64,000 bases of DNA from Mizuhopecten yessoensis (lineage: Eukaryota), in assembly GCF_002113885.1 (NCBI RefSeq), contig NW_018408916.1, forward strand, positions 912,957 through 976,956, written 5' to 3'. This document shows, one piece after another, positions 5,748 through 59,710 of this stretch. Under the pieces are notes generated by a model. The model worked only from the letters and a program-made list of their open reading frames with translations, did not search any database and was not told where the DNA came from. How positions within the stretch are numbered: position 1 is the stretch's first letter; the number at the start of each line of letters is the position of its first letter. The position numbers and the translations under genes are program-made.

Positions 5748-5777
5748 GGAAACCGAAAGAGGAAGTACATGACGTCA
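5748..5777 (+). promoter_or_regulatory. ISRE-like GGAAACCGAAAG + Ets AGGAAGT + CRE TGACGTCA module, TRIM copy 1
   Basis: Matches the GAAANNGAAA IRF consensus; the 12-mer is invariant in four paralogous upstream regions. Confidence 0.65.
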
Positions 5778-7603
5778 TCAGTTTACTATGTATGCATAAT
5801 AGAGTAGGAATCGCATCGTGTGTACAGTAATACCACTGTCGGATACCATAACGTGATGGCTTTAAGTATCCGATGGCGCCATTTTCTTATTACATGCAGA
5901 GCGGAAGTAAAACGGAAAGGTACATACATACAGCCCGAACATATATGTATGGTTTACATATATGACGTTCAGATTATAGGTACATGTATAATGTTCGGAT
6001 TGTGAATACATATATGATGTTCGAATGGTATGTTGTTCACGTGTCTGCGTTGATACATGCGTGAGTATGGAGGGTCGTTAGGGCTTGTCTTATCCCATTC
6101 AAAACGCACTGTCACATGGCATCAATAAAATTGTTGCTGATCGGAACTAAATTGTTCGAACACAATCATGTTTATTTTAAATCAACATTGATAACAAGCA
6201 AATATAATATATATTATATATTTGCCGTCATCAGTAGCTTTCACGATGAAATTTAGTCTTTTTCACATATTCCTAATAAATGATTTGTCGGGCGGTAAAT
6301 ATATTGAATTCAACAAGGAAAAGGACAATTTAAAAAAATAGTTTTAAAGGGAAATTGTTAACAAAGGGAAGGGTACATTGTTACGAGTTACCTCCCGTTG
6401 TGCGATAGAGGAACCTAATTATTCAGCTATCCATAAGGGAAACATATATTTTAATAAATATCAAAGAACATGAAAACCAAGACAACTTTTTCCTAAATCA
6501 GACTTAAGGAGGACAGTAGCCTGAAAATTATGATATGAATAATATTCTAAGAATTCCTGAATGTATACATGGATGGCAAGAAAACATATCCATAAATTTC
6601 CATGACTTTCTTCGCTCGGCTTTTTATAACAACACACACATATATACATTGTACGTAAGTTTTCTCAGCAAAGTACCTTTCATGATAATCTGACTACGTT
6701 ATCAACTCATTCTAATGGTGTATATGAAAGTTTGCAATGGAATATCGCATACATATTTGATATAGTTGTTATTCTTGAGACAGCTACGGATCGGACACTC
6801 GCTCTGAGAAATACAATGTATAACATATTTTGATGTAGTTTGAAATGTACGTACCAAAAGTACGATCATAATTATTTCATATCTAAAGCCAAGTTTGTTT
6901 TTGTAGAAATTGTTTTGTGAACCAATTCAAACAGAGCCAAGCATTCAGTCTGCACTGTATACGTCAAATAGCATGATTAATCACATAACGCAATAGATAT
7001 AAACTACGACTGAATACCAGGCGAAGGTACTCGATAAGCATTTTAGTGACCATTTGACATGTAATCAAACGTAATCGGTCTGTGACTTTGAAGTGTTGTT
7101 CCCACTTTGATTCAGAAATTATACTTGTAACGGTTATGGTGTTTTATATGGATCAATAACACCTTCTGCCCCTGAAACACACTATACCAGGCAGATGTAA
7201 TTAATAAACATTAAGTTTGTGATAATATTCAAGATACTTAATTGCAACCTCTAAGTCTTTCGCATCACTGTGAAAGTCGGGTTAATGTAAATTGTGTTTC
7301 AAACCTATTGTGATGCTCTGTTAAATTGTTAACGGGCCGTTCCATTTGTTGTCATCAGATGAATGGATTACCTGCCTAGCATTATAACTCTCCGCTATGA
7401 TACAGTATATAAACTTTATTAATCAAAATATCAGGATTGGTAAACGTAACATATCTTGCATCTCCACAGGTGTCTACAACCAAATCTTAGATGTAGTAAC
7501 ATGAAAAGTGTCTTATTTTCCTCTTATTTATGAGAGAAACAAACTTTACGTTCCATAAAAGTCATACCGATAATGTTTCGTTATTCTCATACTTGCAGAT
7601 ACA

Positions 7604-9628
7604 ATGGCGGAAGGTGGTCCCCATGCAGACCCTCCAGATACAATGGCGGAAGGTGGTCCCCATGCAGACCCTCAATCTGAAGACAACACACTACGCAACC
7701 TGTCGGATTCCCACCTTCTCAAATGTCCGATCTGTCTGGAGCAGTTACGACAGCCGAAGTCTCTGCCGTGTCGTCATTCTCTGTGTGAGGAATGTTTGAG
7801 TAGCTACATCGTCAGTGAGATGTCAGGGACGAGTGATACGGCGACTTCCTTTATCTGTCCGGTATGTAGGACCCTAACTCACCCCGTGGACAAATCAGAG
7901 GCAAAGGAGAAATGGGCCCAGCAGTTCCCGACCGACAACGTTGCCATAGAGATAATACAACTGAGAAACAGGACGACAGAGCCACGTTACTGCGCGCCCT
8001 GTCAGAGAAAGGGAAGCATGACCTCCGCACGATTCTGGTGTAAAATTACTCAGTCATTGTTCTGTGAGTCTTGTAAAGTGGATTTCCATGATGTGGTCCA
8101 TGTGAGCTGTGATATTGTAGATATGAGAGGTTCCGGAAATTTCTTGCTGAAACATGATACATCTGACAAAAGATGCGACAAACACAAGGATGAGATTGCT
8201 TATTATTGTGAGGATCACAAGTCCCTGGGTTGCAGTAAATGTATAACTGTTGGTCACAGGAAATGTGACAATGTGTCCACAACAGAGGATTACTGTGAGA
8301 AACTGAATAGTAGCTCCCAACTAGAGGAAAGAAAGACATTTCTACAGCAAGGAGCAGACGACATGGAATCTATGATAAAGGACTTTTATCGACGACAACA
8401 GAACATTGCAGACGACAAAGATGCGGTACTGAAAAGAATCGACGACCTGCAGGAACGTATGGATAAACGTATCAGAGAGATGAAGAGGGAAATCACAGAT
8501 GACGTAATCACGGCGTACAAACAAGAAAGAGAAAATCTGAAGGTGTCGACTCAGAAGTGTGAACGACTGATGGTCGCTATACAGAATACATTAGAATCGT
8601 CCACTACAGCTCTACAGAGGAACGACCATATGGACACGATCCGGCTTTACCAGAAAGGTCAGACGGAGCTCGAGGCTTGTAAGGATCTAGTGAAAGAAAT
8701 GCAGATGTCGATTTCAACTGTCAGTATTGAACATGAAATTGATTCGGACGTGACAAGTCTGAACTTTGGTAAAATCTTTGTTCGAAAGCAACAAAAACAT
8801 TTACCAGGTGTCCAAACTCTCGTCAAACCTTTATCCCAATGTAAAGTAAAGGAAATAAGAAAGATGAACATACAATGTCCGTCTGATCAATTTGAATGTG
8901 TTGCCCGTGGTGTTGTTTACTTTCCTGACGGCAGAATTGTGGTGGGAGATGAAAGCAATGAGAAGATCAAGTTAATAAACGACGCTGGGGATGTTGTGGA
9001 CGAGTTGAAATTGGATGGAAATCCTTGGGATCTGTGTATGGTGGATAACACCACTGTGGCGGCCGCTATAGAGAGGCCTGGAGGTATACGTGTAGTGACT
9101 GTCACACCCTCCAAACTTATACTGTCGTCTGTAATAAACACAAATACACGATATTACGGCATAACGTACAGAGATGATGAGTTTATCGTGACTACAGGAT
9201 CCGAAGTCTGTAGTGTTAAGAAAGACGGGACGACCAAGACGTTATATCGATATACTGACAGAGTATACGCGTTGTCACATGATTCCAAGGACGGACAGCT
9301 CTTTATCGCCCATAATACCTACAGAACTGGTAGTACAGCGATTGGTAGGTTGTCTACTGACAACAAGTACACGGACGTGTTGAAGTTTGGTGTAGTTAAG
9401 TGTCCGTATGGAGTGGACGTCGACGTGAAAGGTAACGTCTATGTCTGTGGTTGTACCTCCAACAACGTGGTACAGATGTCCGGGGACGGTACTAACGTCC
9501 GGGAACTGATAACGGCAGCGGACGGTATCACACTTCCACTAGCAATATCTGTTTGTGGTGATAAACTGGTGGTGACAAACAACTTGCATGGTCAGAGTAA
9601 TTTCATCCAAGTGTTTCAACTTGTATGA
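7604..9628 (+). CDS. TRIM-family E3 ligase (RING, two B-box-like domains, coiled coil, NHL-like beta-propeller), copy 1
   Basis: 674-aa ORF with RING CPIC..LPCRHSLCEEC..CPVC, B-boxes CAPC..C/CDKH..CEDH..CSKC..H, a helical region and repeated PxG/xVxD blades. Acceptor ttctcatacttgcAG at 7597-7598. Confidence 0.93.
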   Translation: MAEGGPHADPPDTMAEGGPHADPQSEDNTLRNLSDSHLLKCPICLEQLRQPKSLPCRHSLCEECLSSYIVSEMSGTSDTATSFICPVCRTLTHPVDKSEAKEKWAQQFPTDNVAIEIIQLRNRTTEPRYCAPCQRKGSMTSARFWCKITQSLFCESCKVDFHDVVHVSCDIVDMRGSGNFLLKHDTSDKRCDKHKDEIAYYCEDHKSLGCSKCITVGHRKCDNVSTTEDYCEKLNSSSQLEERKTFLQQGADDMESMIKDFYRRQQNIADDKDAVLKRIDDLQERMDKRIREMKREITDDVITAYKQERENLKVSTQKCERLMVAIQNTLESSTTALQRNDHMDTIRLYQKGQTELEACKDLVKEMQMSISTVSIEHEIDSDVTSLNFGKIFVRKQQKHLPGVQTLVKPLSQCKVKEIRKMNIQCPSDQFECVARGVVYFPDGRIVVGDESNEKIKLINDAGDVVDELKLDGNPWDLCMVDNTTVAAAIERPGGIRVVTVTPSKLILSSVINTNTRYYGITYRDDEFIVTTGSEVCSVKKDGTTKTLYRYTDRVYALSHDSKDGQLFIAHNTYRTGSTAIGRLSTDNKYTDVLKFGVVKCPYGVDVDVKGNVYVCGCTSNNVVQMSGDGTNVRELITAADGITLPLAISVCGDKLVVTNNLHGQSNFIQVFQLV

Positions 9629-28642: not shown

Positions 28643-29517
28643 CTCGCATAACGACTATTAGCTGCCACTAGAAAAATAACGACGTGATTTACGATATGAA
28701 TACGATATCCCACTCCATATTTGATATTGTTTAATTCCGTAATACACGCTAAAGTTTGAAAAACTTTACTCCAGTTGAAAGATTACATAATTTTTACACA
28801 TATTTTATATGAATTTATTGATTGGAGAGGTTGAAATTTTCCGTCTGATTTTACTTTGATTTTGTATCACAATAGTGTACCAAAGTAAGTTATCTCACTA
28901 TTGATTGCATTATAATGATTTCCGTTAGATCTCAGAACCTATACTAACTGATGAACTGTAAAACATAAAGTAAAAAAACGGTTTCTGATTTCCTAGTGTA
29001 AAGTTAGACGGATATTTATTTCATAAAATTCAATGCGATGTTGTGTCAGTGATAAAAGCTCTAAAAATGTCATTGTACCGGGGTGTTTACATGTATGTCT
29101 TCAGTAACGTAAATTGTCAATAATAGTCACCTGTAAGGATGCTGTGTTAATTTGTTCTCTAGTAAATATCTTAAATGAAACAAGGTATGTGTAGTAAACA
29201 ATCGGTAAATTATCCGGATATATCGTACCCGACATTACAATGTACGGACGTGCTATTAGTGTATTGAGTCGCATTCCAAAGTGCGCCGAGCTACCAACGG
29301 GGACGTGTCCCACATCTACACCTCCTCATTTCAAAGACTACAACCATATTCATACATTGATGGAGCGGTAAGTACAAATAAGTATCTCCCGTACTGAGGT
29401 TTTATAACAGTACCACCTTTTACATCAAATGAACATGTAAATAGCGTGTTTTTACTAAGAACACGTTCATTTTAATCGTTGAATATGTTGAAGCGGCTGT
29501 AGTAATGTTAGACGTAC

Positions 29518-29547
29518 GGAAACCGAAAGAGGAAGTACAGGACGTCA
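29518..29547 (+). promoter_or_regulatory. ISRE/Ets module, TRIM copy 3
   Basis: GGAAACCGAAAGAGGAAGTACAGGACGTCA. Confidence 0.65.
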
Positions 29548-31407
29548 CCGATTTATTATCTATGCACAATAGAGTAGGAATCGCATTGGTTGTACAGTCA
29601 AAACACCGTCGGATACCATAATTTGAAGAATTTACGTATCCAACGGCGTCATTTTCTAATTACATACAGAGCGGAAGTAATAGTAAAATTGGGCAAACCC
29701 TCGTTCTATAAATAAATTGTTTTGGTATGGTTGACCGAGAAACGTGTTCATATACATGTGTATGCGTGGATACATGCGTGAGTATGAAGGGTCGTCAGGG
29801 CTTGCTTTTCCAATTCAAAATGCATTGTCAAAGGATTAAAAGTATTTAAATGATATGACCTGATCGGAACTCAATTGTTCGAACACACTCATGTTTATAC
29901 GGCGTTTACACAGGTAAAAAGCAAATGTAATGAATATTATATCTCTGCCAGTATTAATAGCTTTCACTTTGAAATTGACTCGTTTTCACATGTTCGTATT
30001 AAACGATTTGTCGGGCGGTAAATTCATATAATTTAAGAGGCAAATTAGACATACAAAAAGTTTGAAACATACATTTTAAGACATTTGAGGAACATAAAAA
30101 CCAACACAACTTTGTCCTAAATAAGACTGAGGACAGGAGTCCTGGTAAAACTATGTGTAGTAATCTTAGGGTTACTTAACATGTTTACTTTGTTGAAAAG
30201 AAAAAAAAATCCATGAATTTCCGTGGCTTTCTTAGCTCGTCTTTTTATAATAACACACCTACATATATACATTGAATATAAATTTTCTAGCAAATTTGTC
30301 GCTAATCTAAATAAGCTATCCACTCCCTCTATTGGGGAATATGTAAGTTTGCACAGATTCGTTTGAACGCATTACGATTGAAAGAAGATTACTTCGGAAA
30401 TATGTCCAAGTACTGATGACAAATATTAGGAGTAACAAGAAACACAGTTTTCATGTATACGTGTCTAAGTTGCACCTATATCGTACAACGGGAGGTAACT
30501 CATTACACATTATCCTTTCCTATTCGAAATGTAACATTCGTGTACATGTGTACACACTTATTACGTCGCCTATACAAATATCGAGTAAAAATATCGGATA
30601 CAAATTTGATATTGTTGTTATTATTGAGCTACCGATCAGACACTCGCTCTGGGAAATACAATGCATACAATATTTTGATGTAGTTTGAGGCGTACCAAAA
30701 GTACGATCATAATTCTTTCATATCTAAAGGCAAGTTTGTTTGTTGCAGACACTGTTTTGTGAACCAATCTAAACAGAGCCAAGCATTTAGTCTACACTGT
30801 ATAGGTCATATGCCGCAATGAATCACAAAACGCAATAGATGTAAACTACGAATGCGTGTACTATATGAGGCGAATGTACTGCATGTATTTATTATACGTA
30901 TTTGAAGAGTTTGTGCAATTTTGATTTAGAAAGATGGTGTATAGATCAGTAACATTTCGGTTGAAATTCACTATACCAGGCCAATGTAACTGATAAACTC
31001 GATGTTTATCATAATATTCAAGATGCTTGTAACCAATAAGCATTTTGCATCACTTAAAATTTGTTTCAAACCTATATTAATGCTATGTTAAACTGTTCAC
31101 GGAGCATTACGTCTTTCGGCATCAGGAAAATGGATTGCATGCCTAAGTTTTATTTCTCTACCAGGAAACAGTATATAAACGTTCACTAATCAAATTGTCT
31201 GGATTGGTTCACATGACATGTCGTAATTGTGTCTACAAAAAATTTCCTATGTAGTAACATGTACAATACCTTATTTCTATCTTACTTATGAAAAAAAATG
31301 AGTTGCAAGTACGCAAACTTTTCTTTATATACCAGCAAAGTCATGCCGATAATATTTCGTTATTCTCATACTTGCAGATACGGAACTAGCGTTTGAGTAC
31401 GTATACC

Positions 31408-33393
31408 ATGGCAGAAGGTGGTCCCCATGCAGACCCTCACTCTGAAGACGGCACACTACGAAACATCTCGGACTCCCAACTTCTCGAATGTCCAATCTGT
31501 CTTGAGCAGTTACGACAGCCGAAGTCTCTGCCGTGTCGTCATTCTCTTTGTGAGGAATGTTTGAGTAGCTACATCGTCAGTGAGGTGTTAGGGACGAGTG
31601 ATACGGCGACTTCCTTTATCTGTCCGGTATGTAGAACGTTAACTCACCCCGTGGACAAAACAGAGGACAAAGAGAAATGGGCCCGGCAGTTTCCGACCGA
31701 CACCGTTGCCATAGAGATGATACAACTGAGAAACAGGGCGACAGAGCCACGTTACTGCGCGCCCTGTCAGAGAAAGGGAAAGATGACCTCTGCACAATTC
31801 TGGTGTAAAATGAATCAGTCATTGTTCTGTGAGTCTTGTAAAGTGAATCACCATGATGTGGTCCATGTGAGCTGTGATATCGTAGATATAAGAGGTTCCG
31901 GGAATTTCCTGTTGAGACGGGAAACATCTGATAAAAGATGCGACAAACACAAGGATGAGATTGCTTATTATTGTGAGGATCACAAGTCATTGGGTTGCAG
32001 TAAATGTATCATTATTGGTCACAGGGAATGTGACAACGTTTCAACAACAGAGGGTTACTGTGAGAAACTTAATAGTAGCTCCCAACTAGAGGAAAGAAAG
32101 ACATTTCTACAGAAAGGAGCAGACGACATGGAATCCATGATAAAGGACTTTTATCTACGACAACAGAATATTGCAGACGACAAAGATGCGGTACTGAAAA
32201 GCATCGACGACCTGCAGGAACGTATGGAGAAGCGTATCAGAGAGATGAAGAAGGAAATCACAGATGACGTAATCACGGCGTACAAACAGGAAAGAGAAAA
32301 TCTGAAGGTGTCCACACAGAAGTGTGAACGACTGAAGGTCGCTATACAGAATACATTAGAATCGTCCGCTACAGCTCTACAGAGGAACGACCATATGGAC
32401 ACGATCCGGCTTTACCAGAAAGGTCAGACGGAGCTCGAGGCTTGTAAAGATCTAGTGAAAGAAATGCAGATGTCGATTTCAACTGTCAGTATTAAACATG
32501 AAATCGATTTGGACGTGGCAGGTCTGAACTTTGGTAAAGTCGTTGTCAGGAAGCAACGAAGAGATTTACCAGGTGTCCCAACTGTCGTCAAACCCTTATT
32601 CAAATGTGAAGTAAAGGAAATAAGAAAGGTGAACATAAAATGTCCGTCTGATCAATCTGCTTGTAATTCTCGTGGTGTTGTTTACTTTCCTGACGGCGGA
32701 ATTGTAGTGGGAGATAACAACAATCAGAAGATCAAGTTAATAAACGATGAGGGGGATGTTGTGGACGAGTTAAACTTGGATGGACGTCCTTGGGATCTGT
32801 GTATGGTGGATAACACCACTGTGGCGGCCGCTATAGAGAGCCCTGGAGGTATACATGTAGTGACTGTCACACCCTCCAAACTTACACTGTCGTCTGTTAT
32901 AAACAAAAATAAACAGTATTACGGGATAACGTACAGAGATGGTGAGTTTATCGTGAGTACGGGATCCGAAGTCTGTAGCGTAAAGAAAGACGGGACGACC
33001 AAGGCGTTATATCGATATACTGGCGAAGTACTCATGTTGTCACATGATTCCAAGGACGGACAGCTCTTTGTCTCACATTTCAACTCCAGGACTGATAGTA
33101 CGGTGATTGGTAAGTTGTCTACTGACAACAAGTACACGGACGTGTTGAAGGTTGGTGTAGTTAAGAGTACGTATGGAGTGGACGTCGACATGGAAGGTAA
33201 CGTCTATGTCTGTGGTTTTTTCTCCAACAACGTGGTACAGATGTCCGGGGATGGGACTAACGTCCGGGAACTGTTAACGGCAGAGGACGGTATCATACGC
33301 CCACTAGCAATATCTGTTTGTGGTGATAAACTGGTGGTGACAAATTGCGCATCAGGACTGAGGAATTCCATCAAAGTCTTTCAACTCTTTTGA
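31408..33393 (+). CDS. TRIM-family E3 ligase (RING/B-box/coiled-coil/NHL-like propeller), copy 3
   Basis: Intact ORF from ACCATGG at 31408 (661 aa), same architecture as copy 1; acceptor just upstream. Confidence 0.93.
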   Translation: MAEGGPHADPHSEDGTLRNISDSQLLECPICLEQLRQPKSLPCRHSLCEECLSSYIVSEVLGTSDTATSFICPVCRTLTHPVDKTEDKEKWARQFPTDTVAIEMIQLRNRATEPRYCAPCQRKGKMTSAQFWCKMNQSLFCESCKVNHHDVVHVSCDIVDIRGSGNFLLRRETSDKRCDKHKDEIAYYCEDHKSLGCSKCIIIGHRECDNVSTTEGYCEKLNSSSQLEERKTFLQKGADDMESMIKDFYLRQQNIADDKDAVLKSIDDLQERMEKRIREMKKEITDDVITAYKQERENLKVSTQKCERLKVAIQNTLESSATALQRNDHMDTIRLYQKGQTELEACKDLVKEMQMSISTVSIKHEIDLDVAGLNFGKVVVRKQRRDLPGVPTVVKPLFKCEVKEIRKVNIKCPSDQSACNSRGVVYFPDGGIVVGDNNNQKIKLINDEGDVVDELNLDGRPWDLCMVDNTTVAAAIESPGGIHVVTVTPSKLTLSSVINKNKQYYGITYRDGEFIVSTGSEVCSVKKDGTTKALYRYTGEVLMLSHDSKDGQLFVSHFNSRTDSTVIGKLSTDNKYTDVLKVGVVKSTYGVDVDMEGNVYVCGFFSNNVVQMSGDGTNVRELLTAEDGIIRPLAISVCGDKLVVTNCASGLRNSIKVFQLF

Positions 33394-38609: not shown

Positions 38610-38815
38610 GGTCGGGTGGCGCAGTGGATAGCGCGCCCGTCTTCACCAAGATGGCGGGATTCAATACCGGTTACCTGCCCGACCATGCAGGTTTTCTCAG
38701 GATCCGCTGTCATCCTCCCACATAAAGAATTAAATCCTCTGCGTGCTTCCGTCAGGTCACAAAAAGAATGATTGAGATAAGTTGGGGAAAAAACTGTTTG
38801 GTAATTGCTATAGAA
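38610..38815 (+). mobile_element. tRNA-derived V-SINE-like element (same family as 20290-20519)
   Basis: A-box TGGCGCAGTGG, B-box-like GATTCAATACC, and a degenerate GGTTTTCTC..CCTCCCAC core. Confidence 0.75.
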
Positions 38816-48303: not shown

Positions 48304-48304
48304 C

Positions 48305-48316
48305 TGGTGGCAGCGG
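48305..48316 (+). other. Primer binding site, complementary to tRNA-Leu 3' end
   Basis: TGGTGGCAGCGG is the reverse complement of CCGCTGCCA-CCA; lies 1 nt after the LTR. Confidence 0.85.
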
Positions 48317-48493
48317 AAACTTTTCTTTTTTCCTGAATATTTGGCCTGTACATTTTGGATTTTTCAAAAGATAGTGACAGGAGAACAATTGAACTCGGGA
48401 GTAATTTGAATATTTGGTAACGTCTATATTTTTATTGTTTTGGTGAAATTTTTGAGGTACCAGAGTTTTAATAGTAATAGATTTTAGTAAAGG

Positions 48494-50302
48494 ATGGATT
48501 TAAGGAGTAGAAAATTGACTTCGCCGAATTTTGTAAGGGGGGAAATTGTGGGCAGTGAACATATCGATTCTCAAAATAGCCGTGTTGGGTCGCCAATGCC
48601 AAGCGTCATGGGAGTGAACATTCCACAATGTCAATTGGATAAATCACTGGATAGGAGCAGACCAACACCAAGTTTTGGAGAAGACAACAGTTATAGTCCA
48701 CAGGATGTCGATAAAGCAAATCAGGATTCTATGACCTTAGGCGATAACCTTGGAAACCAAGCAGGTCAACCTTCTTACAGACATACAGAGAACGATGTCT
48801 GTGATAGTGCAACCTTACCTCCTATGAGATATGGAGTCCAACAAGATTTATGTAGCAGTACAGTTCCAGTCCACACAACTCAGGGAGCTTCTACAAATCT
48901 GTTTCAAAACCCCCAAAGCACAACTATATCTCAGGAGTTCCGTAATGGAAACCGGGATAGTTCTTCCAATATGTATGACAATCGGGCGTCCCACGATTTA
49001 TATAGAGGAAACCAATGCGATGTCACTGTTGGACCATCTCATGAGTTCCGTAATGGAAACAGAGACATGTTCCGTAATGGAAATAATTCACAGTGTCCCT
49101 CCGCAAACTACTCAGAGTTCCGTAATGGAAACTGGGGAGATGTCGCTGTTGCGGAATCCCATGAATTCCGTAATGGAAACAGGGATAAGTTCCGTGATGG
49201 AAATACCTCACAGTGCCAACAAAACGATTTCTCAGAGTTCCGTAATGGAAACAATGGAAATCATCGCAGACAGCAGAACTATGGAGCGGAAGTGGAGTTC
49301 CGGCGCAGAAACAACGACCAAATTTCTACGGAACCCTACCACAACGCAAGATCTGGTTACAATCAGAATTGTATGCCGTATTCGGGATCACTTTCTTACT
49401 CATCAAGTCGGACGGGTAGAGAACCTGAGACTAGATTACCTACATTCAACGGACGTGGAGACTGGCAAGCGTTCATAACAACTTTCAACATGATTGCTGG
49501 TAGATTTTGCTGGAACGAGGCGAGACGGTGTGAGGAGATATTGTTTTGTCTGAGAGAGGACACCTTATCCTTTGCGACTAGACTGCCAATTCAGAGCAGA
49601 CTGGACTACTATCAGTTATGTACAGACATGCAACGGCGGTTTGGGGATATCTCATTACCAGAGACATACAGACGGAAGTTGACAAACGTTAAGAAATCAA
49701 GTGAAGAATCCATGCAAACCTTTTCTTCTAGAGTGGAACAAATGGTTCGAAAGGCCTATCCGGGCATCAACCACATACTCTACAATAACCTATGTGTGGA
49801 GCATATGTTAAATGGTATCCAAGACCAGAGTATAGCATACGATGTCCTGACTAAAAGACCACAGACAGTGGAAGAAGCTATTAATCTCCTAACATGGCAT
49901 TATACTTGCAAGAACAGTGTGAAGCAAGTTAAGAACAACGTGCGAGAGGTCACGGTAATAGAGAAAGACCATGATGATCCGGAAGTACGGCGAACCAGTC
50001 AAGGACGTTACGTGACTGAAGAACGGTTACAACAGTTTGGCAGGGATATGGTGAAAGACCTTAAGGAGAGCATTTCGAAGGAAATCAAGGAAGCAATAAG
50101 TAACCTAGACAGGTCAAAATCAAATGGCTACAAGAAGGGTAATTTTGCCCGGAATCACCAAGATGTGGAATGCTACCAATGCCATAAGAAAGGTCACTAT
50201 CGAAGTGAATGTCCAGAGCTAAATGAAGGCAACAAAGGACACAGAGCGAACAATACGACGCAGACAGAACTTAAAAATGGAGTGACAAAGAATTTAAACT
50301 AG
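48494..50302 (+). CDS. gag: Gypsy Gag with N-terminal EFRNGN repeats and CCHC knuckle
   Basis: 602-aa ORF; capsid-like LPTFNG..W..F; CYQCHKKGHYRSEC. Confidence 0.92.
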   Translation: MDLRSRKLTSPNFVRGEIVGSEHIDSQNSRVGSPMPSVMGVNIPQCQLDKSLDRSRPTPSFGEDNSYSPQDVDKANQDSMTLGDNLGNQAGQPSYRHTENDVCDSATLPPMRYGVQQDLCSSTVPVHTTQGASTNLFQNPQSTTISQEFRNGNRDSSSNMYDNRASHDLYRGNQCDVTVGPSHEFRNGNRDMFRNGNNSQCPSANYSEFRNGNWGDVAVAESHEFRNGNRDKFRDGNTSQCQQNDFSEFRNGNNGNHRRQQNYGAEVEFRRRNNDQISTEPYHNARSGYNQNCMPYSGSLSYSSSRTGREPETRLPTFNGRGDWQAFITTFNMIAGRFCWNEARRCEEILFCLREDTLSFATRLPIQSRLDYYQLCTDMQRRFGDISLPETYRRKLTNVKKSSEESMQTFSSRVEQMVRKAYPGINHILYNNLCVEHMLNGIQDQSIAYDVLTKRPQTVEEAINLLTWHYTCKNSVKQVKNNVREVTVIEKDHDDPEVRRTSQGRYVTEERLQQFGRDMVKDLKESISKEIKEAISNLDRSKSNGYKKGNFARNHQDVECYQCHKKGHYRSECPELNEGNKGHRANNTTQTELKNGVTKNLN

Positions 50303-50335
50303 TTAGGACTGTGCCTGTCGGCCAAGACACAGTCC
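50293..50335 (+). promoter_or_regulatory. -1 programmed ribosomal frameshift signal
   Basis: T TTA AAC in the gag frame just before the stop, 6-nt spacer, stem GGACTGTG/CACAGTCC; pol is in the -1 frame. Confidence 0.88.
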
Positions 50336-53300
50336 GTATAGATATAACAGAAAAGACAGATAGATGCGAGGTCCATGTAGTTAAGGAGACTGACACATCA
50401 GTGGAATTAGAGTCTGATAACGGAGCGTATTTGAGGGAGCTGTTTGATGAGACTTCATGTGATACTGCTGGTCGGTGCCAGGCAGTAGAGATCGATGTTT
50501 GTCCAGCCAAAATGGAGCGATCGGAGGACGAGGACAATATGACAAAACCATTGAGGGAAGTAGTCATAGATAGGGTCCGGGCAGTCACGATTACGGCGTC
50601 CATGATGGTGGAAGGAAAAATTATCAGGGCGGTAGTGGACACAGGTGCTGAAGTCACTGTGATGAGCGAGAAGAAGTTTATGCAGTTTCCGGAAGATATG
50701 ACACCGTTGGTGAGAGATGCCGATGTAGGTTTAGCTGTAGCCGAGGCCGGCAAGAAACTAACGACATACGGCTTAGCTGATGTACAGATGACTTTGGGCG
50801 ACAAAGTATTTCCTTGGAGTATTTATATTGCTCCTATCAAAGACGACTTGTTGTTGGGTTGTGACGTCATCGATGCATTTGACATTACAGTTAACACCAA
50901 ACGTGGATTGGAGATTGATGGGAAATGGATGGAGTGTGAAGTGAGAAGGGCTCAGGACCAGATCGCAAGATTAGTAGTACAGGAGACAGTTCTTATACCT
51001 GCTATGTCTGAAGTCATAGTGGCGGGAGAGGCGCAAAATGCCGAAGTATTGGATACACGGTATTCTGCTGTGGAGCCTACAGTTGAAGACGAAAGAACTT
51101 TCATAGTTGCACGGACGTTGGTTGATCCATACAAGCACACAGTGCCGATCAGGATTGTAAACACCAGTAAAACGCCAGTCAAGTTAAGGAAAAGACACAT
51201 GATAGCCGCGTTACACCCTGTGGAGAGTTTTGAAGAAATATTTAAAGAAAATGGAGATACATGGGACAGATTTATCATGATGGAACAAGCTAAACAAAGA
51301 ACTAAAAATCTTCGTCAGGTGGAAGTTATTTTGGAGGACACAGCTACTCAGGCACCAATCATTCCAAAAGAGTGGAATACGGACACAGAGGGAAAGGCCG
51401 ATTCTCCAGTTGTACCGGAATTTCTCAGGGAATTGTTTGACAGAAGCTGTGAAAACGTCACAGATAAAAAACACAGAGATAGATTGGCAGACATTCTTAT
51501 CAGAAATCAGGACAGCTTTGCTAAAAACAAGTTGGAGCTAGGATCCTGCTCAGTTATTGAACACAAAATAGAGACAGGTACAGCTGCACCTGTTCGTCAA
51601 CCTTTGAGGAGGACACCTCGTGGTTTCGAGGTGGAGGAAGAAATATATCTAAAGGATCAAATAGACAACGGGACTATTCATGAATCCAAGTCAAGTTGGG
51701 CTTCAAATATTGTCTTAATCCGGAAAAAAGATGGCACGGTTTGCTGGTGCTGTGATTATCGCCGTTTGAATGATTGTACTATCAATGATGCATATCCACT
51801 ACCTCGCATCGATACTTGCTTGGATTGCCTATCGTCAGCATCTATATTTTCAACTATGGATCTTCAAAGCGGATACTGGCAACTAAAACTAGCTGAGGAG
51901 GATCGAGCGAAGACAGCATTTATCACAAAATATGGATTGTATGAGTACATAAAGATGCCTTTTGGTCTTTGCAACGCTCCTAGCACATTTCAAAGATGTA
52001 TGGAACTCATTTTCCGAGGAATGCAGTGGAAAACCATATTAATCTACTTGGATGACGTCATTCTATTCAGCTCAGATATGGAGGAACATTTGGAGAAACT
52101 GGAAGAAATTCTGAAACGCTTCAAGTCTGCAGGTTTAAATTTGAAACCATCAAAGTGCGAGTTTGTGAAAAAGGAAGTCCTATATCTCGGACACATCGTC
52201 GGAGCAGAGGGGATAAATGCTAACTCTAAGATAGTAGAAGCTGTAAGAAACTGGAAGCAGCCTACTACAGTCAAAGAAGTCCAACAGTTCATCGGGCTCT
52301 GCAATTATTACAGGCGCTTTATTGAGCACTTTAGTGAACTATCTGCACCTTTAACAGAGTTGACCAAAAAGGATGTAAAATTCATTTGGACTGAAGAATG
52401 CGAGAACACATTTCACCTTTTGAAAGAAAAAATGTGTCATTCACCAATTTTGGCTATACCAAACAACGAGGACCCAATAATCTTGGACAGATGCCTCAAA
52501 TATTGGAGTTGGAGCAGTGCTTTCACAAGTACAAAACGGAAGAGAGCGTCCAGTAGCTTACGCGTCTAAAAAGCTAGACCGTCATCAACAAAGATACAGT
52601 GTGACCCGGAGGGAGCTTTTGGCTGTCGTGACATTTATCACACAGTTTAAGCACTATCTCCTGGGAAGGCGATTCCTGTTGCGGACAGATCATGGATCAC
52701 TACGCTGGCTGTTTGGATTCAAAGATCCACAGGGACAAGTCGCCAGATGGTTGGAATGTCTTGGGGAATTCGATTTTGAAATACAGCATCGTGCAGGAAA
52801 ACGTCATCAGAACGCGGATGCCCTATCACGTTGTGATGTTGATGATTTGTGCACACATCAAAAGGAGGGAACCGTGGATAAGCAATGTATTACTTGTATC
52901 CAGCTGAAGCAGAATTGGAAGCAGTTCAAGGAAGACGTTGACAATGTGCAACCATTAGGAGGTCAAAACATTGAGAAAGATGTTCGAGCCGTTAAGACAA
53001 ACGTGGTCAAGGCAAAAGAAAGTAACTGGATGGACGGATATTCTTATAAGGAACTGTCAGTTTTCCAGGAAGAAGACGACGATTTGAAACATCTACATGA
53101 GTGGGTTAAGGTCGATAAGATACCCACAAGAGACAATGTGGCTAAACATAGCCCTGCTGTAAGGAAGTTATGGCTAAATTGGAATAACATTGTATGCCAA
53201 CATGGACTGTTGTATCAGCGTTGGAGAACGGCATCACCTGAAACAGAGAAACTGCAACTGTTAGTACCAAAAATACTTAAACCAGAGATTATGAAGCGTT

Positions 53301-54346
53301 GTCACAACTCTACGTATGCTGCTCATCCGGGTGTTCAACGTACAATGGAGAAACTACGGGAAATTTTTTATTGGTACAAGATGATCAATGATGTCAAGAC
53401 CCATGTGCATTTATGCGAAAACTGTAATCGATGGAAATCGACAGTACCAACATCCAAAGCTACGCCCAGTGACCACAGAGTGGGATATCCTTTGGATAGA
53501 GTTGGCATCGACGTGATCGGACCACTCCCTCGGACAAAGAATCAGAATCAATATATCCTAGTAATTGGAGATCATTTCACAAGATGGATGGAAGCGTATC
53601 CTCTTCCTAACCAATCAGCTGAAAAAGTCGCGGAGAAGTTGGTAAAAGAATTCATAGCCAGATTCGAGATTCCTTTAGAAATTCATTCGGACCAAGGTAC
53701 CAATTTTGAAAGTCAGATCTTTCAGGAAGTGTGCAAACTCCTTCAAATTACAAAGACCAGGACCACCCCCTATCATCCTGAATCAAACGGATTGATCGAA
53801 CGGTTTAATAAAACGTTGGGAACTATGATCAAGTGCTTCCTGAAAGAGAATCCTAAGGAATGGGACCGTCACTTGGAAATACTTATGGCAGCATATAGAA
53901 GTACAAAGCATTCTGCAACTGGATTCAGCCCCAACGTTATGATGTTTGGACGTGAAGTGAATACACCAATAAACATTTTGTTTCCGACAGAGGGATCAAC
54001 GGAATTCACATCTACCGAATACGTGGGAAGATTACGCGAGACCTTGGAGACCATGTACAACACGGCTAGAAATAAATTAGGGGAAAAAGCGAGTTACACA
54101 AAAAGAAACAGTGATACCCGTATTCATGATAAACCATACAATATAGGGGAATTTGTGTATAAATTAAAGCCGAAACATAGAAAACTGGAGTCACCATGGT
54201 CAGGACCGTACATCGTCACCAAAGTATTGAGTGATGTCGTTTACGAGATCACCCATAGTAAACATAAAGAGATTGTACATTTTAATAAATTAAAGACCTG
54301 TACAATGTTAGAAAGTCCAAAATGGGCCAAAACCTATATGCTATGA
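50293..54346 (+). pseudogene. pol: Gypsy Pol (protease, RT, RNase H, integrase) with one frameshift at ~52489
   Basis: VDTGAE; MPFGL, YLDD; RNaseH D[T]DAS broken by an apparent 2-bp deletion; integrase H..H..CxxC, D..D..E and WSGPY. Confidence 0.92.
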
Positions 54347-54369
54347 TCTTTTGTTTTTACAGGTTAACG

Positions 54370-55086
54370 ATGAGCTTTCAATGTAGTATTTGTGAAGGCA
54401 AATATAAAGGAAAGAAGAGTGCCATAGTACATTTCTTGTCACAGCACAAACCTATTGAGAGTGCCCCATTTAGTTGTACCCTTTGTGGGTATAGATCCCT
54501 AACCTCTGCTTCTTTGAAAGCTCACACCAAAGGATATCGACCACATTGGGAAAAAAGACAGATAACCAGTTTAAATGATCTGGATTGCTTTCAAAGAAGC
54601 CTAAGACCGTATTCAGTGACTTTTGGAGTCGGAAATGAAGATATGTGTTATATAAAGGAAGATCTGGAAGTGAGGAAGGAAGAAAGATTGACAGAGATTA
54701 AGGAAAATATGGAAGCGAAGAATGAAGAAAGAGCGACAGAGATCAAGGAAGATATGGAAGTGAGGAAGGAAGAAAGAGCGACAGAGACCAAGGAAGACCT
54801 GGATGGACTGTTACATGATGTCCTGGAATTGTGTGAGGACGAGACAGAGAGGTTCAAGAAGGAAAAGGAAGCGGAAGCGGAAGTGGACAGGATCCGGAAA
54901 GAGATAGTTTAGTGCGAAAAGAAAAGAGCGACAGAGAGTGCGAAGTTTGGAAAGTATGTAGAGAGATTAGAGAAGAAGTTAGATGAGTGTAGAGGGCGTA
55001 AGAGAGATTATGGAAGTTCATACGGTTTTGAGGAGATGTGGGAGGAATATGGGAATGAAAGTAAGAGACTTAAGAGTGTGGTGTGA
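54370..55086 (+). CDS. Extra ORF3 of the Gypsy element: two C2H2-type fingers plus charged coiled coil; in-frame TAG at 54910
   Basis: Acceptor ttttgtttttacAG at 54362; CSIC..H..H and CTLC..H..H; EERxTEIKEDMEVRK-like repeat x3; frame stays open ~57 codons beyond the TAG. Confidence 0.7.
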
Positions 55087-55288
55087 GTGGTAAAGAAATA
55101 AACATGTTGTCATATCTATTGTTAAAATTAAAGAGCTGGAAATGTAATTTAAATAATATTTGGCTGGATGTACATATCTTTGTAAAGAAAGATTTGATTT
55201 TGAATTCTACTGTGTAGATTCTTGAAATATTTCTCAAAGTGTTCTGTTTTAAAATTGTTCTTTCTACATTTTGGGGACAAAATGGTCT

Positions 55289-55301
55289 AAAAGGGGAAAA
55301 G
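55289..55301 (+). other. Polypurine tract
   Basis: AAAAGGGGAAAAG abutting the 3' LTR. Confidence 0.9.
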
Positions 55302-56467
55302 TGTTGTGAAACTGGGATTTGTTGACATTCGTTATAATAATAGTAATTCTTTATATAGCTTACTAAAATCGTATTTATCATTACTAGTGTATCTCTATGT
55401 CAATGTGATATCAACAATACCTTTATAATCGTTAAGAGAGTCAGTTTTTATGTTTTCAAAAAGTCGGACGTCAAACTTTCCCGCAATCTATTGACAGTTT
55501 ATGTCGTTGTATACGTGACGTAACTTCCGGGTTATTTCGTCAGCTATTAATAGTATCATACGTTAAAGATAACGGAGTCTTTGTAATTCGTACTGAATTT
55601 GTCCATAAGAAAGAAATACATATGTAATTGTAAAATTATACTTCAAGAATGTTCTGTTGTTTTGCGTTACCATTGTGGCACGCGCTATTCGATATAAAAG
55701 CGGATTGCGGTCTGTTTTGAAGGAGTCGAGCTGGTAGAGATCCTGAGTGTACCAAGCGAGGTAACTCTTGTGAAAGGTAGGGCATTTTTATAGGAACTTA
55801 AATTATACTCTATCTAGTTTAATGGAGTATTTATATATTTCCAATTCATATTTATAACCTTCGGTGAACCGTGAAGTCGGGCTCGGAGGAAAATAAGTTA
55901 CAAATACTAATTTAAGGGGTATTTGAATACATTTCGATAACTTGTGTGAGCCACGTAATGCGGAGTCACAAGAAAGTAATTGTGTTTAAGGTTTAGATAA
56001 CTCTATATGTTATAACCTGTGTTGAACCGTGAAGTCGGTCTCACGGGAAACTAAAGAAACTTGTAAGGCATAGATAAATCTATCAATCATAACCTGTGGT
56101 GAGTCGTGAATTCGAACTCACAGGAAAACAATGGACATGTAAGGCTTATTTTAACTAACCGTTAAGCTCCCCGAGCGTATATTTCTTGATTGATAAGTAA
56201 TTCCTAGTGTTTATGATAGCTATATTGTTCAAGTAGGATTTTTCATGATAGCATAGTACGACTCGACTCATATGCTTTGGTGACGGGATTATGTAAATGT
56301 ATTTTGTATACGAAGATGTAAATTGTATGTAATGGAATTCTGTATACTGATATGTATATGGTAGTAACTGAATAAACACCATCCTCGTACTTGATATCAA
56401 CTATCGAACTCTTAATTTCTGGTACCGAATAACGGCTTTCCATACAAGAAGGCACAATTTTATTACA
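55302..56467 (+). repeat. 3' LTR (1166 bp)
   Basis: About 6 substitutions and 1 indel versus the 5' LTR, counted by eye. Confidence 0.97.
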
Positions 56468-57299: not shown

Positions 57300-58138
57300 T
57301 GATGTTGACACAGAAAGATCATATAGCATTGACACAAAAAGATCATATAGCGTTGACACAGAAAGATCATATAGCGTTGACACAGAAAGATCATATAGCG
57401 TTGACACAGAAAGATCATATAGCGTTGACACAGAAAGATCATATAGCGTTGACACAGAAAGATCATATAGCGTTGACACAGAAAGATCATATAGCGTTGA
57501 CACAGAAAGATCATATAGCGTTGACACAGAAAGATCATATAGCGTTGACACAGAAAGATCATATAGCGTTGACACAGAAAGATCATATAGCGTTGACACA
57601 GAAAGATCATATAGCGTTGACACAAAAGGATCATATAGCGTTGACACAGAAAGATCATATAGCGTTGACACAGAAAGATCATATAGCGTTGACACAGAAA
57701 GATCTTGTAGCGTTGACACAGAAAGATCATATAGCGTTGACACAGAAAGATCATATAGCGTTGACACAGAAAGATCATATAGCGTTGACACAGAAAGATC
57801 ATATAGCGTTGACACAGAAAGATCATATAGCGTTGACACAGAAAGATCATATAGCGTTGACACAGAAAGATCATATAGCGTTGACACAGAAAGATCATAT
57901 AGCGTTGACACAGAAAGATCATATAGCGTTGACACAGAAAGATCATATAGCGTTGACACAGAAAGATCATATAGCGTTGACACAAAAGGATCATATAGCG
58001 TTGACACAGAAAGATCATATAGCGTTGACACAGAAAGATCATATAGCGTTGACACAGAAAGATCTTGTAGCGTTGACACAAAAAGATCATATAGCGTTGA
58101 CACAAAAAGATCATATAGCGTTGACACAAAAGGATCAT
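57300..58138 (+). repeat. 24-bp minisatellite GTTGACACAGAAAGATCATATAGC, ~35 copies
   Basis: Near-perfect tandem array; variant monomers recur at 360-bp spacing. Confidence 0.97.
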
Positions 58139-58569
58139 TAATTAATATTTTATTTCAATAGCTATTTTCACCTGCAACAAAGGGTTTACCAACCTTTACA
58201 CTACACATAATACCTAGTGTTATAATTGACCTTTAATAATCACATACCATGCAATATGATTGGCATAATTATCAATAAACAAATCATTGTAATGTCTTTG
58301 ATTGATTATCATTATGAACACACTAGTCTATTAACCCTCGAAAAATCCCTCCTTAATCCATTATGGCGGATTACAAAGATATAGAAGGTAAACAGTGGTC
58401 TATAGATACTGCGTCCTATACTACTTCTATAAATTTACCAAATAATTTGCCATTATTGATATAGGAGGAGTTATGTCGTAATAATATCTGTCGATACCAG
58501 CGGTATGTGTATGTATTGTAGGCCGCAGCTATAATTAAAATAGCAATGTTTGTAAAATTATAAACTTAT

Positions 58570-59710
58570 AAATTAAACTATGATCGTAAAAGTTGGTACG
58601 TTTATCCCAAAATTGCTCCATTCGACTTCTGGTAAAAATCCAACCATCATATTTGATTCATTACATCACTTATAACAATTAAATGATACCAATGCTCGTT
58701 CATGTTTATAGATTTTCGGCATTGTCTTTCATTTTCTTGTTACCTCAAAATGTATCTGTCAACCTTTCAAACATGAATATTTTATATTAAATTTTCGATT
58801 TAAGAGACGTTTATCATCGCCTTCATCTGACTAAACTCTGGTCTCTTTCCAATAATATATCAAAAGAAATTCAGAACTTTATCGATTGCTATTATGACTA
58901 TTTCCGTTAGATCCTAGTACATTGGCATACTGAGAAAACGTAACATGTAAGCATTGAGTAAATAAACGGTTTTGGATTACCTAGTCTAAAGTAAGACGGA
59001 TATCCATTTCATAAAAATCAATGCGATGTTGTGACAGTGATAATAGCTCTACAAAATGTCATTGTACCGAAGGGTGTGTGACTTCTTTAACGTAAATCGT
59101 CAATTTTACAAACATGTAAGGATGATGTATTTTGTTTTTAGTATAAATCTTAAACGAAACAACACATCTTGATTTTTTTCCCGGACACACCGCACCCGTC
59201 ACTACGGTCTTCTAATTAGTGTATTGGTTCACATTCCAACGGTAGCCGTGACAACAACAGGCTGTGGAGAGGTGTAAACACACCTTGTTACGTCACAGAG
59301 CACAACTATATTCATACATTGATGGAACGTTAAGTACAATTAAATATCTTCCGTACTGACATTTTATAACGTAACACTAATTACACCAAATTAACATTTA
59401 AATAGAGTGTATTCACTAAGAAAACATTCATTTTAATCGTAGAATATGTTGTAGCGTCTGTGGTAATGTTAGATTTAAGGAAACCGAAAGAGGATGTACA
59501 GGACGTCAACAGTTTAGTCTTTATGCAAAATAAAGATCGAATCATAACGGCGTCATTTTCCAATGGATACGCATAGCGGAAGTTATAGGAAAATTGGGCA
59601 AACCCTCGTTCTATAAATAAATCGCTATGTTATACATGTAGTTGACCAAGAAAGGTATGTGTACATGTAGGTGATGAACATGAAACGCCACGACTGTCTT
59701 ATCTTCATTG
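58570..59710 (+). promoter_or_regulatory. Fourth, more diverged copy of the TRIM upstream region; ISRE at 59479-59490
   Basis: Colinear homology to 18240-20240 and 28415-29810, but without the satellite. Confidence 0.75.

What the first reader, a model, noticed from the sequence alone, without database searches (positions are those of the whole stretch)
5748..59490. Invariant ISRE + Ets (+CRE, kB-like) module upstream of every TRIM unit
Seen: GGAAACCGAAAGAGGA(A/T)GTACA occurs at 5748, 19968, 29518 and 59479 and is conserved while its flanks diverge. It sits 1.79-1.89 kb before each ATG. A second GCGGAAGT lies ~100-150 bp downstream in all four, and kB-like GGAATTTTCC occurs at 5079 and 19396. 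Established: GAAANNGAAA is the IRF-binding ISRE, and bivalves have IRFs and an interferon-like response. Inference: the array is virus/dsRNA-inducible, with a noncoding first exon spliced to the acceptor before the ATG.
Basis: partly seen in the sequence, partly recalled or inferred. Interest (0 to 1): 0.78.

Follow-up and report, generated by a model that had tools for sequence, protein, structure and literature searches.

The report
Conserved ISRE-like element in scallop TRIMs
A short DNA motif resembling a binding site for interferon-regulatory factors sits at the 5' end of each copy of a duplicated scallop TRIM gene and is kept in the same place in four scallop genera, so it is very probably a real gene switch, but what binds it and what induces it is untested.

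Summary
The window is Yesso scallop (Mizuhopecten yessoensis) DNA with three tandem RING/B-box/NHL TRIM genes. In a formal seven-copy alignment it is the single most conserved 22-column window of 960.

The core AAA[C/A]CGAAAG-N-GGA[A/T]G recurs on the sense strand 5' of related TRIM genes in Pecten, Argopecten and Ylistrum, where the flanks no longer align. It is therefore a selected cis-element. It fits the IRF-E/ISRE core and, in this species, the IRF-Ets composite GAAANNGGAA.

- The fourth copy (59479) has no TRIM gene behind it and is an orphan.
- TRIM B carries a nonsense codon.
- The kB-like site is at chance level, and the CRE is exact only in copy A. The CRE, the second Ets site and the TATA box are not conserved across genera (the kB-like site was not compared there).
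- A consensus splice donor (GTAAGT) lies about 100-285 bp upstream of the element in every lineage. The element therefore probably sits at the start of intron 1, not upstream of the ancestral start site. A species-specific TATA/donor downstream may give an alternative first exon.

IRF binding and virus or dsRNA induction remain untested inference. I class it as a new member of a known kind, of moderate interest.

The parts
5748..5769 (+). ISRE-like + Ets-like element, copy A (GGAAACCGAAAGAGGAAGTACA)
   Evidence: Exact match. It is the most conserved window in the 7-copy alignment.
19968..19989 (+). Element, copy B
29518..29539 (+). Element, copy C
59479..59500 (+). Element, copy D (GGATGT form). 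This is an orphan copy of the 5' block (58757-59673) with no TRIM ORF downstream. Its exon-1 donor is mutated to GTTAAGT.
5444..5484 (+). Putative core promoter/start region of exon 1a in copy A (TTATCCGGATATA ... CATTACAATGTACGGACGTG). These are the second most conserved blocks among the six gene-linked copies. Related pieces occur in Pecten, Ylistrum and paralogues.
   Evidence: The start site itself is inferred, not mapped.
5597..5602 (+). Consensus 5' splice donor GTAAGT, 153 bp upstream of the element (copy A). This is the putative end of noncoding exon 1a.
19818..19823 (+). Same donor, copy B
29368..29373 (+). Same donor, copy C
5901..5908 (+). Second Ets-type site GCGGAAGT, copy A. The other copies are at 20121, 29671 and 59576. 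It is invariant in the seven M. yessoensis copies but not conserved across genera.
29707..29713 (+). TATAAAT box 187 bp downstream of the element, copy C. It is also at 20157 (B) and 59612 (D). In A it is replaced by satellite-like sequence. It is a possible species-specific alternative promoter (exon 1b).
29778..29783 (+). GTGAGT donor of the putative alternative exon 1b, copy C. Copy A has it at 6061-6066. It is absent or mutated in B and D.
5770..5777 (+). Palindromic CRE TGACGTCA abutting the element. It is exact only in copy A; the other window copies keep the CGTCA part (ACGTCA in C and D, GCGTCA in B).
7597..7598 (+). Splice acceptor AG after a pyrimidine tract, 5 nt before the ATG of TRIM A. 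The equivalents are at 21724-21725 (B) and 31376-31377 (C).
7604..9628 (+). TRIM A coding exon (674 aa; RING, B-box, NHL)
21756..23732 (+). TRIM B coding exon with a TGG-to-TAG nonsense codon at 22149-22151 (probable pseudogene)
31408..33393 (+). TRIM C coding exon (about 661 aa)

Best explanation
The 22-mer is the core of a selected, promoter-proximal cis-regulatory element of a scallop-specific subfamily of RING/B-box/NHL TRIM genes.

Sequence. Its invariant part, AAA[C/A]CGAAAG, is an IRF-type site: the ISRE/IRF-E core GAAANNGAAA, or at least AANNGAAA. It is followed 1 nt later by GGA[A/T]G. That second part may be an Ets core or a degenerate third GAAANN hexamer. In M. yessoensis the arrangement GAAA-GA-GGAA equals the IRF-Ets composite sequence GAAANN[N]GGAA.

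Ancestral gene layout. The layout is a short noncoding exon 1, a GTAAGT donor, the element 100-285 bp further on, an intron of 1.2-8.6 kb, an acceptor, and the ATG 5-35 nt later. The element most likely acts as an intron-1 enhancer about 250 bp from the start site. In the M. yessoensis cluster a TATA box and a second donor downstream may add an alternative first exon. Relative to that exon the element lies at about -220.

Proposed mechanism (inferred). Scallop IRFs, possibly with an Ets partner, bind the element and give immune-stimulus-dependent and/or haemocyte-biased transcription to the whole tandem array.

What is shown: the sequence, the conservation, the position and the splice signals. 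What is inferred: IRF occupancy, inducibility and the start site.
For: Conservation within the species:
- There are exact copies at the four sites.
- The window ranks 1 of 960 in the 7-copy alignment. The longest invariant run among the six gene-linked copies is 24 nt.

Conservation across genera:
- The cross-genus alignment has only one invariant run, AAACCGAA plus GGA.GT.
- The pattern was fixed after seeing L004, L007 and L008. It was then found in newly fetched Argopecten loci: L009 has one exact and one near match, L011 has four. Pecten L010 matches 18 of 22 positions. About 0.002 matches per locus are expected by chance.
- Variants with an intact GAAA-AC-GAAAG core sit at the homologous spot in M. 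yessoensis P0012 and Pecten P0027.
- The 10-mer AAA[AC]CGAAAG occurs 19 times in 316 kb, all on the sense strand. Seventeen of these are this element.
- Across nine lineage representatives, information content is 1.41 bits per position in the motif against 0.74 in the flanks.

Gene layout:
- A donor lies upstream of the element in 9 of 9 lineage representatives. Acceptors are conserved.
- The tree places all carriers in one TRIM subfamily.

Literature:
- Scallop CfIRF1/2 and oyster CgIRF1/2/8 bind or activate ISREs (PMC13524488, PMC5557890).
- The IECS is defined as GAAANN[N]GGAA (PMC3189223).
- TRIMs are among the poly(I:C)-primed gene families in oyster (PMC7064767).
Against: - There are no expression, start-site or binding data.
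- In Argopecten and in Pecten L004 the first half-site is CAAA, not GAAA. L004 also has GAAC in the second half-site.
- Most non-Mizuhopecten copies have GGAT rather than GGAA. P0012 lacks the Ets-like part altogether. The composite reading is therefore weak outside this species.
- The invariant C before GAAA and a conserved 5' flank (TG.TAGA..TA) are not required by IRFs. They hint at another or an additional factor.
- Blimp-1/PRDM1-type factors recognise overlapping GAAAG sites (own knowledge).
- Two close paralogues (P0002 and its neighbour) have lost the element, although P0002 is still annotated as a full-length gene.
Confidence: 0.5

Rival explanations
1. The element is a real, selected cis-element, but a non-IRF factor binds it. 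Candidates are a Blimp-1/PRDM1-like repressor on GAAAG, an Ets protein alone on GGAWG, or an unknown factor that reads the whole ~32-bp block TG.TAGA..TA..AAACCGAAAG.GGAWG. It would then set tissue-specific or constitutive expression, not an interferon-like response.
For: - The conserved block is longer than an IRF site and includes positions IRFs do not specify.
- The first GAAA is CAAA in Argopecten and in Pecten L004.
- GGAT predominates over GGAA.
Against: - The only part kept in every clade is AAA[C/A]CGAAAG. The one tolerated change falls on an N position of GAAANNGAAA.
- P0012 lost the GGAWG part but kept and extended the GAAA repeats.
- Extra canonical GAAAGTGAAAGT and AAAACGAAAG sites lie nearby in Argopecten L009 and Ylistrum L007.
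Confidence: 0.27
2. The element is an upstream promoter module at about -220 from a TATA-driven start site. The noncoding first exon lies downstream of it, ending at the GTGAGT donor at +245 to +311.
For: - TATAAAT at +131 to +188 sits inside a nearly invariant block of about 28 nt in 6 of 7 M. yessoensis copies, including the old copy D.
- GCGGAAGT lies about 35 bp before it.
- A GTGAGT donor is present in copies A, C, E and G.
Against: - None of these features exists downstream of the element in Pecten, Ylistrum, Argopecten or M. yessoensis P0012.
- Copy A lacks the TATA box and copy B lacks the donor.
- By contrast, the upstream GTAAGT donor and the CCGGAT/CCCGGCATT promoter piece are kept in all lineages, even in the element-less P0002.
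- This rival concerns position only. It could be true as an additional, species-specific first exon.
Confidence: 0.3
3. The element has no function. The identity among copies would be left over from recent tandem duplication or gene conversion, or the motif would be part of a repeat or transposon carried along with the unit.
For: - The copies are 69-91% identical over the whole 5' block.
- Copy D, probably dead, still keeps 21 of 22 positions.
- The element unit is tandemly repeated four times in Argopecten L011.
- Satellites and retroelements surround the units.
Against: - Cross-genus retention occurs in otherwise unalignable sequence.
- Strand and position are strictly specific in 316 kb.
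- No match occurs elsewhere in the window.
- Gene conversion cannot act between genera.
Confidence: 0.04
4. The element functions at the RNA level. It would be an intronic splicing enhancer or a small RNA encoded at the start of intron 1.
For: It lies at a fairly constant short distance (about 100-285 nt) downstream of a conserved donor.
Against: - No Rfam family matches anywhere in the window.
- The purine-rich GAAA repeats fit a DNA-binding site.
- In Argopecten L011 extra copies accumulate far from the donor.
- The distance to the donor varies nearly threefold.
Confidence: 0.05

Closest known systems
Vertebrate ISRE / IRF-E (GAAANNGAAA; IRF-E consensus G(A)AAA(G/C)(T/C)GAAA(G/C)(T/C))
   Same: The M. 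yessoensis, Ylistrum and Pecten L010 copies carry GGAAACCGAAA. From my own memory, not checked here, this equals the core of the classical human ISG15 ISRE probe. The two GAAA cores are 2 nt apart, and the variable positions fall on the N positions.
   Different: - The host is a protostome with no known ISGF3.
- The 3' flank is G-A/T/C rather than C-T.
- The first G is C in Argopecten.
- The probable location is intron 1.
- Neither binding nor induction has been shown.
IRF-Ets composite sequence, IECS (GAAANN[N]GGAA), and EICE (GGAANNGAAA) of IRF4/IRF8 with PU.1 (PMC3189223)
   Same: GAAA-GA-GGAA in the M. yessoensis copies and Pecten L010, and GAAA-GC-GGAA in one Argopecten copy, match the IECS exactly in order and spacing.
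   Different: - Most other copies have GGAT, and one paralogue has none.
- To my knowledge, Spi/PU.1-class Ets factors are not described in molluscs, so any partner would be a different Ets protein.
- Cooperative binding is untested.
Mollusc IRF target promoters (oyster CgIFNLP promoter bound by CgIRF1; human ISRE reporters activated by CgIRF2/8 and bound by scallop CfIRF1/2; PMC13524488, PMC5557890)
   Same: The same proposed trans-factors in the same animal class. This would be an endogenous target site.
   Different: Those studies used heterologous ISRE reporters or one cytokine-like gene promoter. No conserved endogenous ISRE in a TRIM family has been described in the papers I could search.
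Blimp-1/PRDM1 sites overlapping IRF sites (own knowledge)
   Same: The GAAAG(T/C)G core is present in the Argopecten form AAACCGAAAGTGG.
   Different: The bases 5' of GAAAG fit less well. The comparison was made by eye only.

Membership tests
ISRE / IRF-E cis-element | Sequence core GAAANNGAAA (minimal IRF site AANNGAAA) | tested here: met
   The full core is present in all M. yessoensis copies, P0012, Ylistrum L007, and Pecten L010 and L012. Argopecten has CAAACCGAAA, so only the minimal site is met. Pecten L004 has GAAC, so the site is not met there.
ISRE / IRF-E cis-element | Bound by IRF-family DNA-binding domains | not testable with these tools
   Only the literature shows that scallop and oyster IRFs bind ISRE probes (PMC13524488, PMC5557890).
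ISRE / IRF-E cis-element | Confers induction by virus, dsRNA or an interferon-like signal | not testable with these tools
   No transcript or expression data are reachable. Oyster TRIM families respond to poly(I:C) priming (PMC7064767), but this concerns another species and other genes.
ISRE / IRF-E cis-element | Promoter-proximal position, conserved among orthologues | tested here: met
   The element has the same orientation in four genera. It lies 100-285 bp after the exon-1 donor and 1.2-8.7 kb before the ATG.
IRF-Ets composite sequence (IECS) | GAAANN[N]GGAA arrangement | tested here: inconclusive
   Met in M. yessoensis copies A-C and E-G, Pecten L010 and Argopecten L011b. It reads GGAT in copy D, Ylistrum, Pecten L004 and L012, and most Argopecten copies. 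It is absent in P0012.
IRF-Ets composite sequence (IECS) | Cooperative IRF + Ets occupancy | not testable with these tools
   None.
cAMP response element (CRE) | TGACGTCA, conserved | tested here: not met
   Exact only in window copy A (5770) and in L005. The other M. yessoensis copies keep the CGTCA part. It is absent in the other genera.
NF-kB / Rel site | GGGRNNYYCC-type 10-mer, more frequent than chance and conserved | tested here: not met
   GGAATTTTCC lacks the third G. It is intact in 2 of 7 copies. The window count is at chance level, with 37 of 100 shuffles reaching it.
TRIM-NHL proteins (the genes served) | RING + B-box + C-terminal NHL repeats | tested here: met
   - RING: E 1e-8.
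- B-box: 19-24 bits, near the cut-off of 24.1.
- NHL: 17-30 bits against a cut-off of 20.
- Best relatives are scallop TRIM2/3/MID-like entries.

The most novel reading that the evidence does not exclude
The element is a true IRF-Ets composite enhancer of the IECS type, sitting at the 5' end of intron 1. It has been maintained since before the split of Mizuhopecten, Pecten, Argopecten and Ylistrum. This would show that cooperative IRF/Ets cis-logic controlling an expanded antiviral-type TRIM family exists in a protostome. Natural loss (P0002) and multimerised (Argopecten L011) alleles would mark regulatory sub-functionalisation within the arrays.
Probability: 0.18. Interest if true: 0.7.

Novelty: new member of a known kind. 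Interest (0 to 1): 0.5.

Why it matters
Bivalves have very large TRIM expansions and an interferon-like response. Almost nothing is known about the cis-regulatory code that links the two. Mollusc IRFs have mainly been assayed on human ISRE reporters.

A short element conserved across four scallop genera, at a fixed place in a tandemly expanding TRIM subfamily, gives a concrete endogenous target to test. Natural controls come with it: element-less paralogues, a fourfold-repeated allele and an orphan copy.

If IRFs bind it, it would be a handle for defining invertebrate 'ISG-like' regulons by motif. If they do not, it points to an unknown regulator of an immune-type gene family.

Tried and rejected
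- kB-like site: at chance level and not conserved.
- CRE as part of an invariant module: exact in only 2 of 7 M. yessoensis copies (A and G) and absent in other genera.
- 'Every TRIM unit': tblastn shows three TRIM ORFs only. Copy D is an orphan.
- ncRNA or tRNA origin: no Rfam hits at gathering thresholds and no tRNAs in the window.
- Neutral leftover of duplication, or a repeat: rejected on cross-genus retention and strict strand and position specificity.
- Strict pattern too narrow: AAACCGAA.{1,7}GGAWGT first scored L006 and L012 as negatives. Inspection showed homologous AAAACGAAAG variants at the expected place, so those 'absences' were artefacts of the pattern.
- Shuffle control: a Markov-shuffle control script timed out. 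It was replaced by an analytic expectation.
- By-eye comparison with Myb (YAACKG), E2F (TTTSSCGC) and Grainyhead (AACCGGTT) consensus sites: poor fits, and the AAAACG variants break the Grainyhead half-site. This rests on my own knowledge; no matrix scan was available.
- Literature searches for scallop TRIM regulation or ISREs in TRIM promoters found nothing specific.
- No transcript evidence could be obtained. All twelve contig look-ups returned genome assemblies only.
- An N run in L001 (14330-14605) was left as it is.

Full report
**What the window is.** The best protein matches identify the window as a scaffold of the Yesso scallop Mizuhopecten yessoensis. TRIM A is 100% identical to a protein on a 2.99-Mb contig, and its closest named relatives are M. 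yessoensis TRIM-like entries.

The window holds three tandem units. Each has a single coding exon for a RING/B-box/NHL TRIM protein:
- A: 7604-9628.
- B: 21756-23732.
- C: 31408-33393.

B carries a TGG-to-TAG nonsense codon at 22149-22151. The units are segmental duplicates. Their coding parts are 80-89% identical and their 5' blocks are 74-80% identical.

The rest of the window is:
- a 26-bp satellite (1-4664, 18292-18930, 28468-28633, 60779-63685);
- a young Ty3/gypsy-type LTR element (47137-56467);
- other retroelement pieces and minisatellites.

There are no N runs in the window.

**Checking the observation.** The 22-mer is exactly at 5748, 19968 and 29518 (GGAAGT form) and at 59479 (GGATGT form). 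There are no further matches with up to three mismatches and none in shuffles. GCGGAAGT follows at +153, +153, +153 and +97. The ATG lies 1856, 1788 and 1890 bp downstream for A, B and C.

The fourth copy does not fit the claim.
- tblastn finds no TRIM sequence after 33393.
- Homology of copy D to the other units covers only 58757-59673.
- D is followed by SINE-like sequence, satellite and an RT fragment.
- The locus fetched for protein P0007 overlaps the window end (window 61377-64000 equals L002 1-2624). It shows that the next TRIM gene has its own copy of the motif, about 9.1 kb beyond D.

D is therefore an orphan copy of the 5' block.

The kB-like 10-mer is at the stated coordinates but is at chance level. 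It is intact in only two of seven copies. TGACGTCA is exact only in window copy A.

**Is the motif more conserved than its flanks?** I aligned seven M. yessoensis copies. Four come from the window. The other three are E (from L002), F (from L003) and G (from L005), the last two on a second scaffold.
- The motif window has 1 minimum substitution. It ranks first of 960 22-column windows, and the next best has 4.
- Its invariant run is 16 columns against 10 for the next longest. A local permutation gives p = 0.0006.
- Without the orphan D, the invariant run is 24 nt.

The motif is, however, the summit of a conserved block of about 450 bp, not an island.

**Related loci.** The stronger test came from other genera. 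Loci encoding the closest TRIMs were fetched from Pecten maximus, Ylistrum balloti and Argopecten irradians.

In the cross-genus alignment the flanks do not align. The only invariant run is AAACCGAA followed by GGA.GT. I then fixed the pattern AAACCGAA.{1,7}GGAWGT and fetched four more loci.
- Argopecten L009 has one exact copy and one near copy, one before each of its two TRIM genes.
- Argopecten L011 has four tandem copies.
- Pecten L010 has GGAAACCGAAAGAGGAAGG.
- Pecten L012 seemed negative.

About 0.002 matches per locus are expected by chance.

Inspection showed that L012 and the M. yessoensis paralogue P0012 (L006) carry AAAACGAAAG variants at the homologous place. The single change falls on an N position of GAAANNGAAA.

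In all 316 kb held, AAA[AC]CGAAAG occurs 19 times, always on the sense strand. Seventeen of these are this element. Across nine lineage representatives the consensus is TG.TAgAtaTAtg.AAAcCGAAAG.GGA.Gt. The motif carries 1.41 bits per position against 0.74 in the flanks.

A protein tree puts the carriers in one TRIM subfamily. The window cluster is sister to the Ylistrum/Pecten/Argopecten orthologues.

Only P0002 and its neighbour (L001) have lost the element. Homology runs through exon 1 and the donor up to ...GTTAGA. The core there reads AAATTAGTAG, beside an AP-1-like TGACTCA.

**Anatomy.** Every gene has a pyrimidine tract and an AG acceptor 5-35 nt before the ATG. A noncoding first exon is therefore well supported.

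In all nine lineage representatives, and in all M. yessoensis copies except D, a consensus donor (mostly G|GTAAGT) lies 102-283 bp upstream of the element. The product of the chance probabilities is 1.4e-10. In D it is mutated to GTTAAGT.

Upstream of that donor lie the next most conserved blocks: TTATCCGGATATA and CATTACAATGTACGGACGTG. Recognisable relatives occur in Pecten, Ylistrum, P0012 and P0002.

The ancestral layout is therefore:
1. promoter piece;
2. exon 1a of about 110 nt;
3. donor;
4. the element;
5. an intron of 1.2-8.6 kb;
6. acceptor;
7. ATG.

It rests on features found only in the M. yessoensis cluster. These are a TATAAAT in 6 of 7 copies and a GTGAGT donor in A, C, E and G. 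They are absent in the other genera. It may be an added alternative first exon. In either layout the element is within about 250 bp of a start site. The start sites are inferred; no transcript data were reachable.

**Mechanism.** The core fits the ISRE/IRF-E consensus. In M. yessoensis the order GAAA-GA-GGAA equals the IRF-Ets composite sequence GAAANN[N]GGAA (PMC3189223).

Scallop CfIRF1/2 and oyster CgIRF1/2/8 are reported to bind or activate ISREs (PMC13524488, PMC5557890). TRIM families are among the genes that respond to poly(I:C) priming in oyster (PMC7064767).

The pattern of variation favours the IRF part as the functional core:
- the GAAA cores are kept everywhere except one Pecten copy;
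- the NN position varies;
- P0012 lost GGAWG but gained more GAAA-type repeats;
- Argopecten multiplied the unit;
- further canonical sites lie nearby in Argopecten and Ylistrum.

Against a simple IRF reading:
- the first half-site is CAAA in Argopecten;
- GGAT predominates outside this species;
- the conserved 5' flank suggests an additional factor.

I therefore give 0.5 to 'IRF-bound, immune-responsive enhancer'. I give about 0.27 to 'real element, other factor'. Non-functional or RNA-level readings get little.

**Comparison and novelty.** This works like a vertebrate ISRE or IECS. Membership is met only at the level of sequence and conserved position. Binding and inducibility are untested.

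I found no paper describing a conserved ISRE-like element in bivalve TRIM genes. I file it as a new member of a known kind, of moderate interest (0.5). The interest comes from deep conservation, the natural loss and gain variants, and direct testability.

**Limits.**
- All inferences about transcription are from sequence alone.
- Factor assignments by consensus are partly from my own knowledge.
- The scallop genomes could not be scanned as a whole.
- The retroelements were only described.

Noticed in passing
window 1-4664, 18292-18930, 28468-28633, 60779-63685; L002 5891-6196; L003 1758-2063: A 26-bp satellite (CATCATACATGTACATACAGTCCGAA) lies 170-400 bp 5' of nearly every TRIM 5' block. In copy A a satellite-like stretch (about 5920-5960) replaces the TATA block. 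The satellite may be part of the duplication unit or may promote unequal crossing-over.
   Followed up: partly
window 47137-56467: A Ty3/gypsy-type LTR retrotransposon with 1167-bp LTRs that are 99.4% identical. It has long gag/protease/RT/RNase H/integrase ORFs (48494-54346) and looks like a recent insertion. It was described only.
   Followed up: partly
window 39706-41958 and 61967-62755: There is a further retroelement ORF (zinc knuckle + RT) in a GC-rich patch (49% GC at 40-42 kb). There is also an RT fragment embedded in the satellite.
   Followed up: no
window 22149-22151: TRIM B has a TGG-to-TAG nonsense codon at codon 132, in an otherwise intact reading frame that is 87% identical to A. 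It is a young pseudogene, a polymorphism or an assembly error.
   Followed up: partly
window 57304-58138 and 26951-27195: There is a 24-bp minisatellite (34.8 copies, 97% matches), open in several frames, just 5' of orphan copy D. There is also a 20-bp minisatellite between units B and C.
   Followed up: no
window ~20290-20530 (matches 38597-38819 on the minus strand) and ~60230-60340: GC-rich inserts that look like tRNA-derived SINEs. One lies in the intron of unit B and one downstream of copy D. ARAGORN calls no tRNA.
   Followed up: no
L001 5900-5960 and 19540-19600: Two close paralogues (P0002 and the next gene) keep exon 1 and its donor but have lost the element. An AP-1-like TGACTCA sits at that spot. 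This may be a regulatory switch between paralogues.
   Followed up: partly
L011 6961, 7428, 7594, 7788: In one Argopecten irradians TRIM gene the ~80-bp unit carrying the element is repeated four times, 166-467 bp apart. This forms a homotypic cluster.
   Followed up: partly
L009 7816 and 16628; L007 1095: Extra canonical IRF-type sites occur nearby. TCGAAAGTGAAAGTAAT lies about 510 bp 5' of the exon-1 donor of both Argopecten L009 genes. A second AAAACGAAAG lies 256 bp 5' of the element in Ylistrum.
   Followed up: no
L012 817-6802 and 17118-21845: The Pecten maximus TRIM P0027 lies between two divergently oriented cytidine/dCMP-deaminase-domain genes.
   Followed up: no
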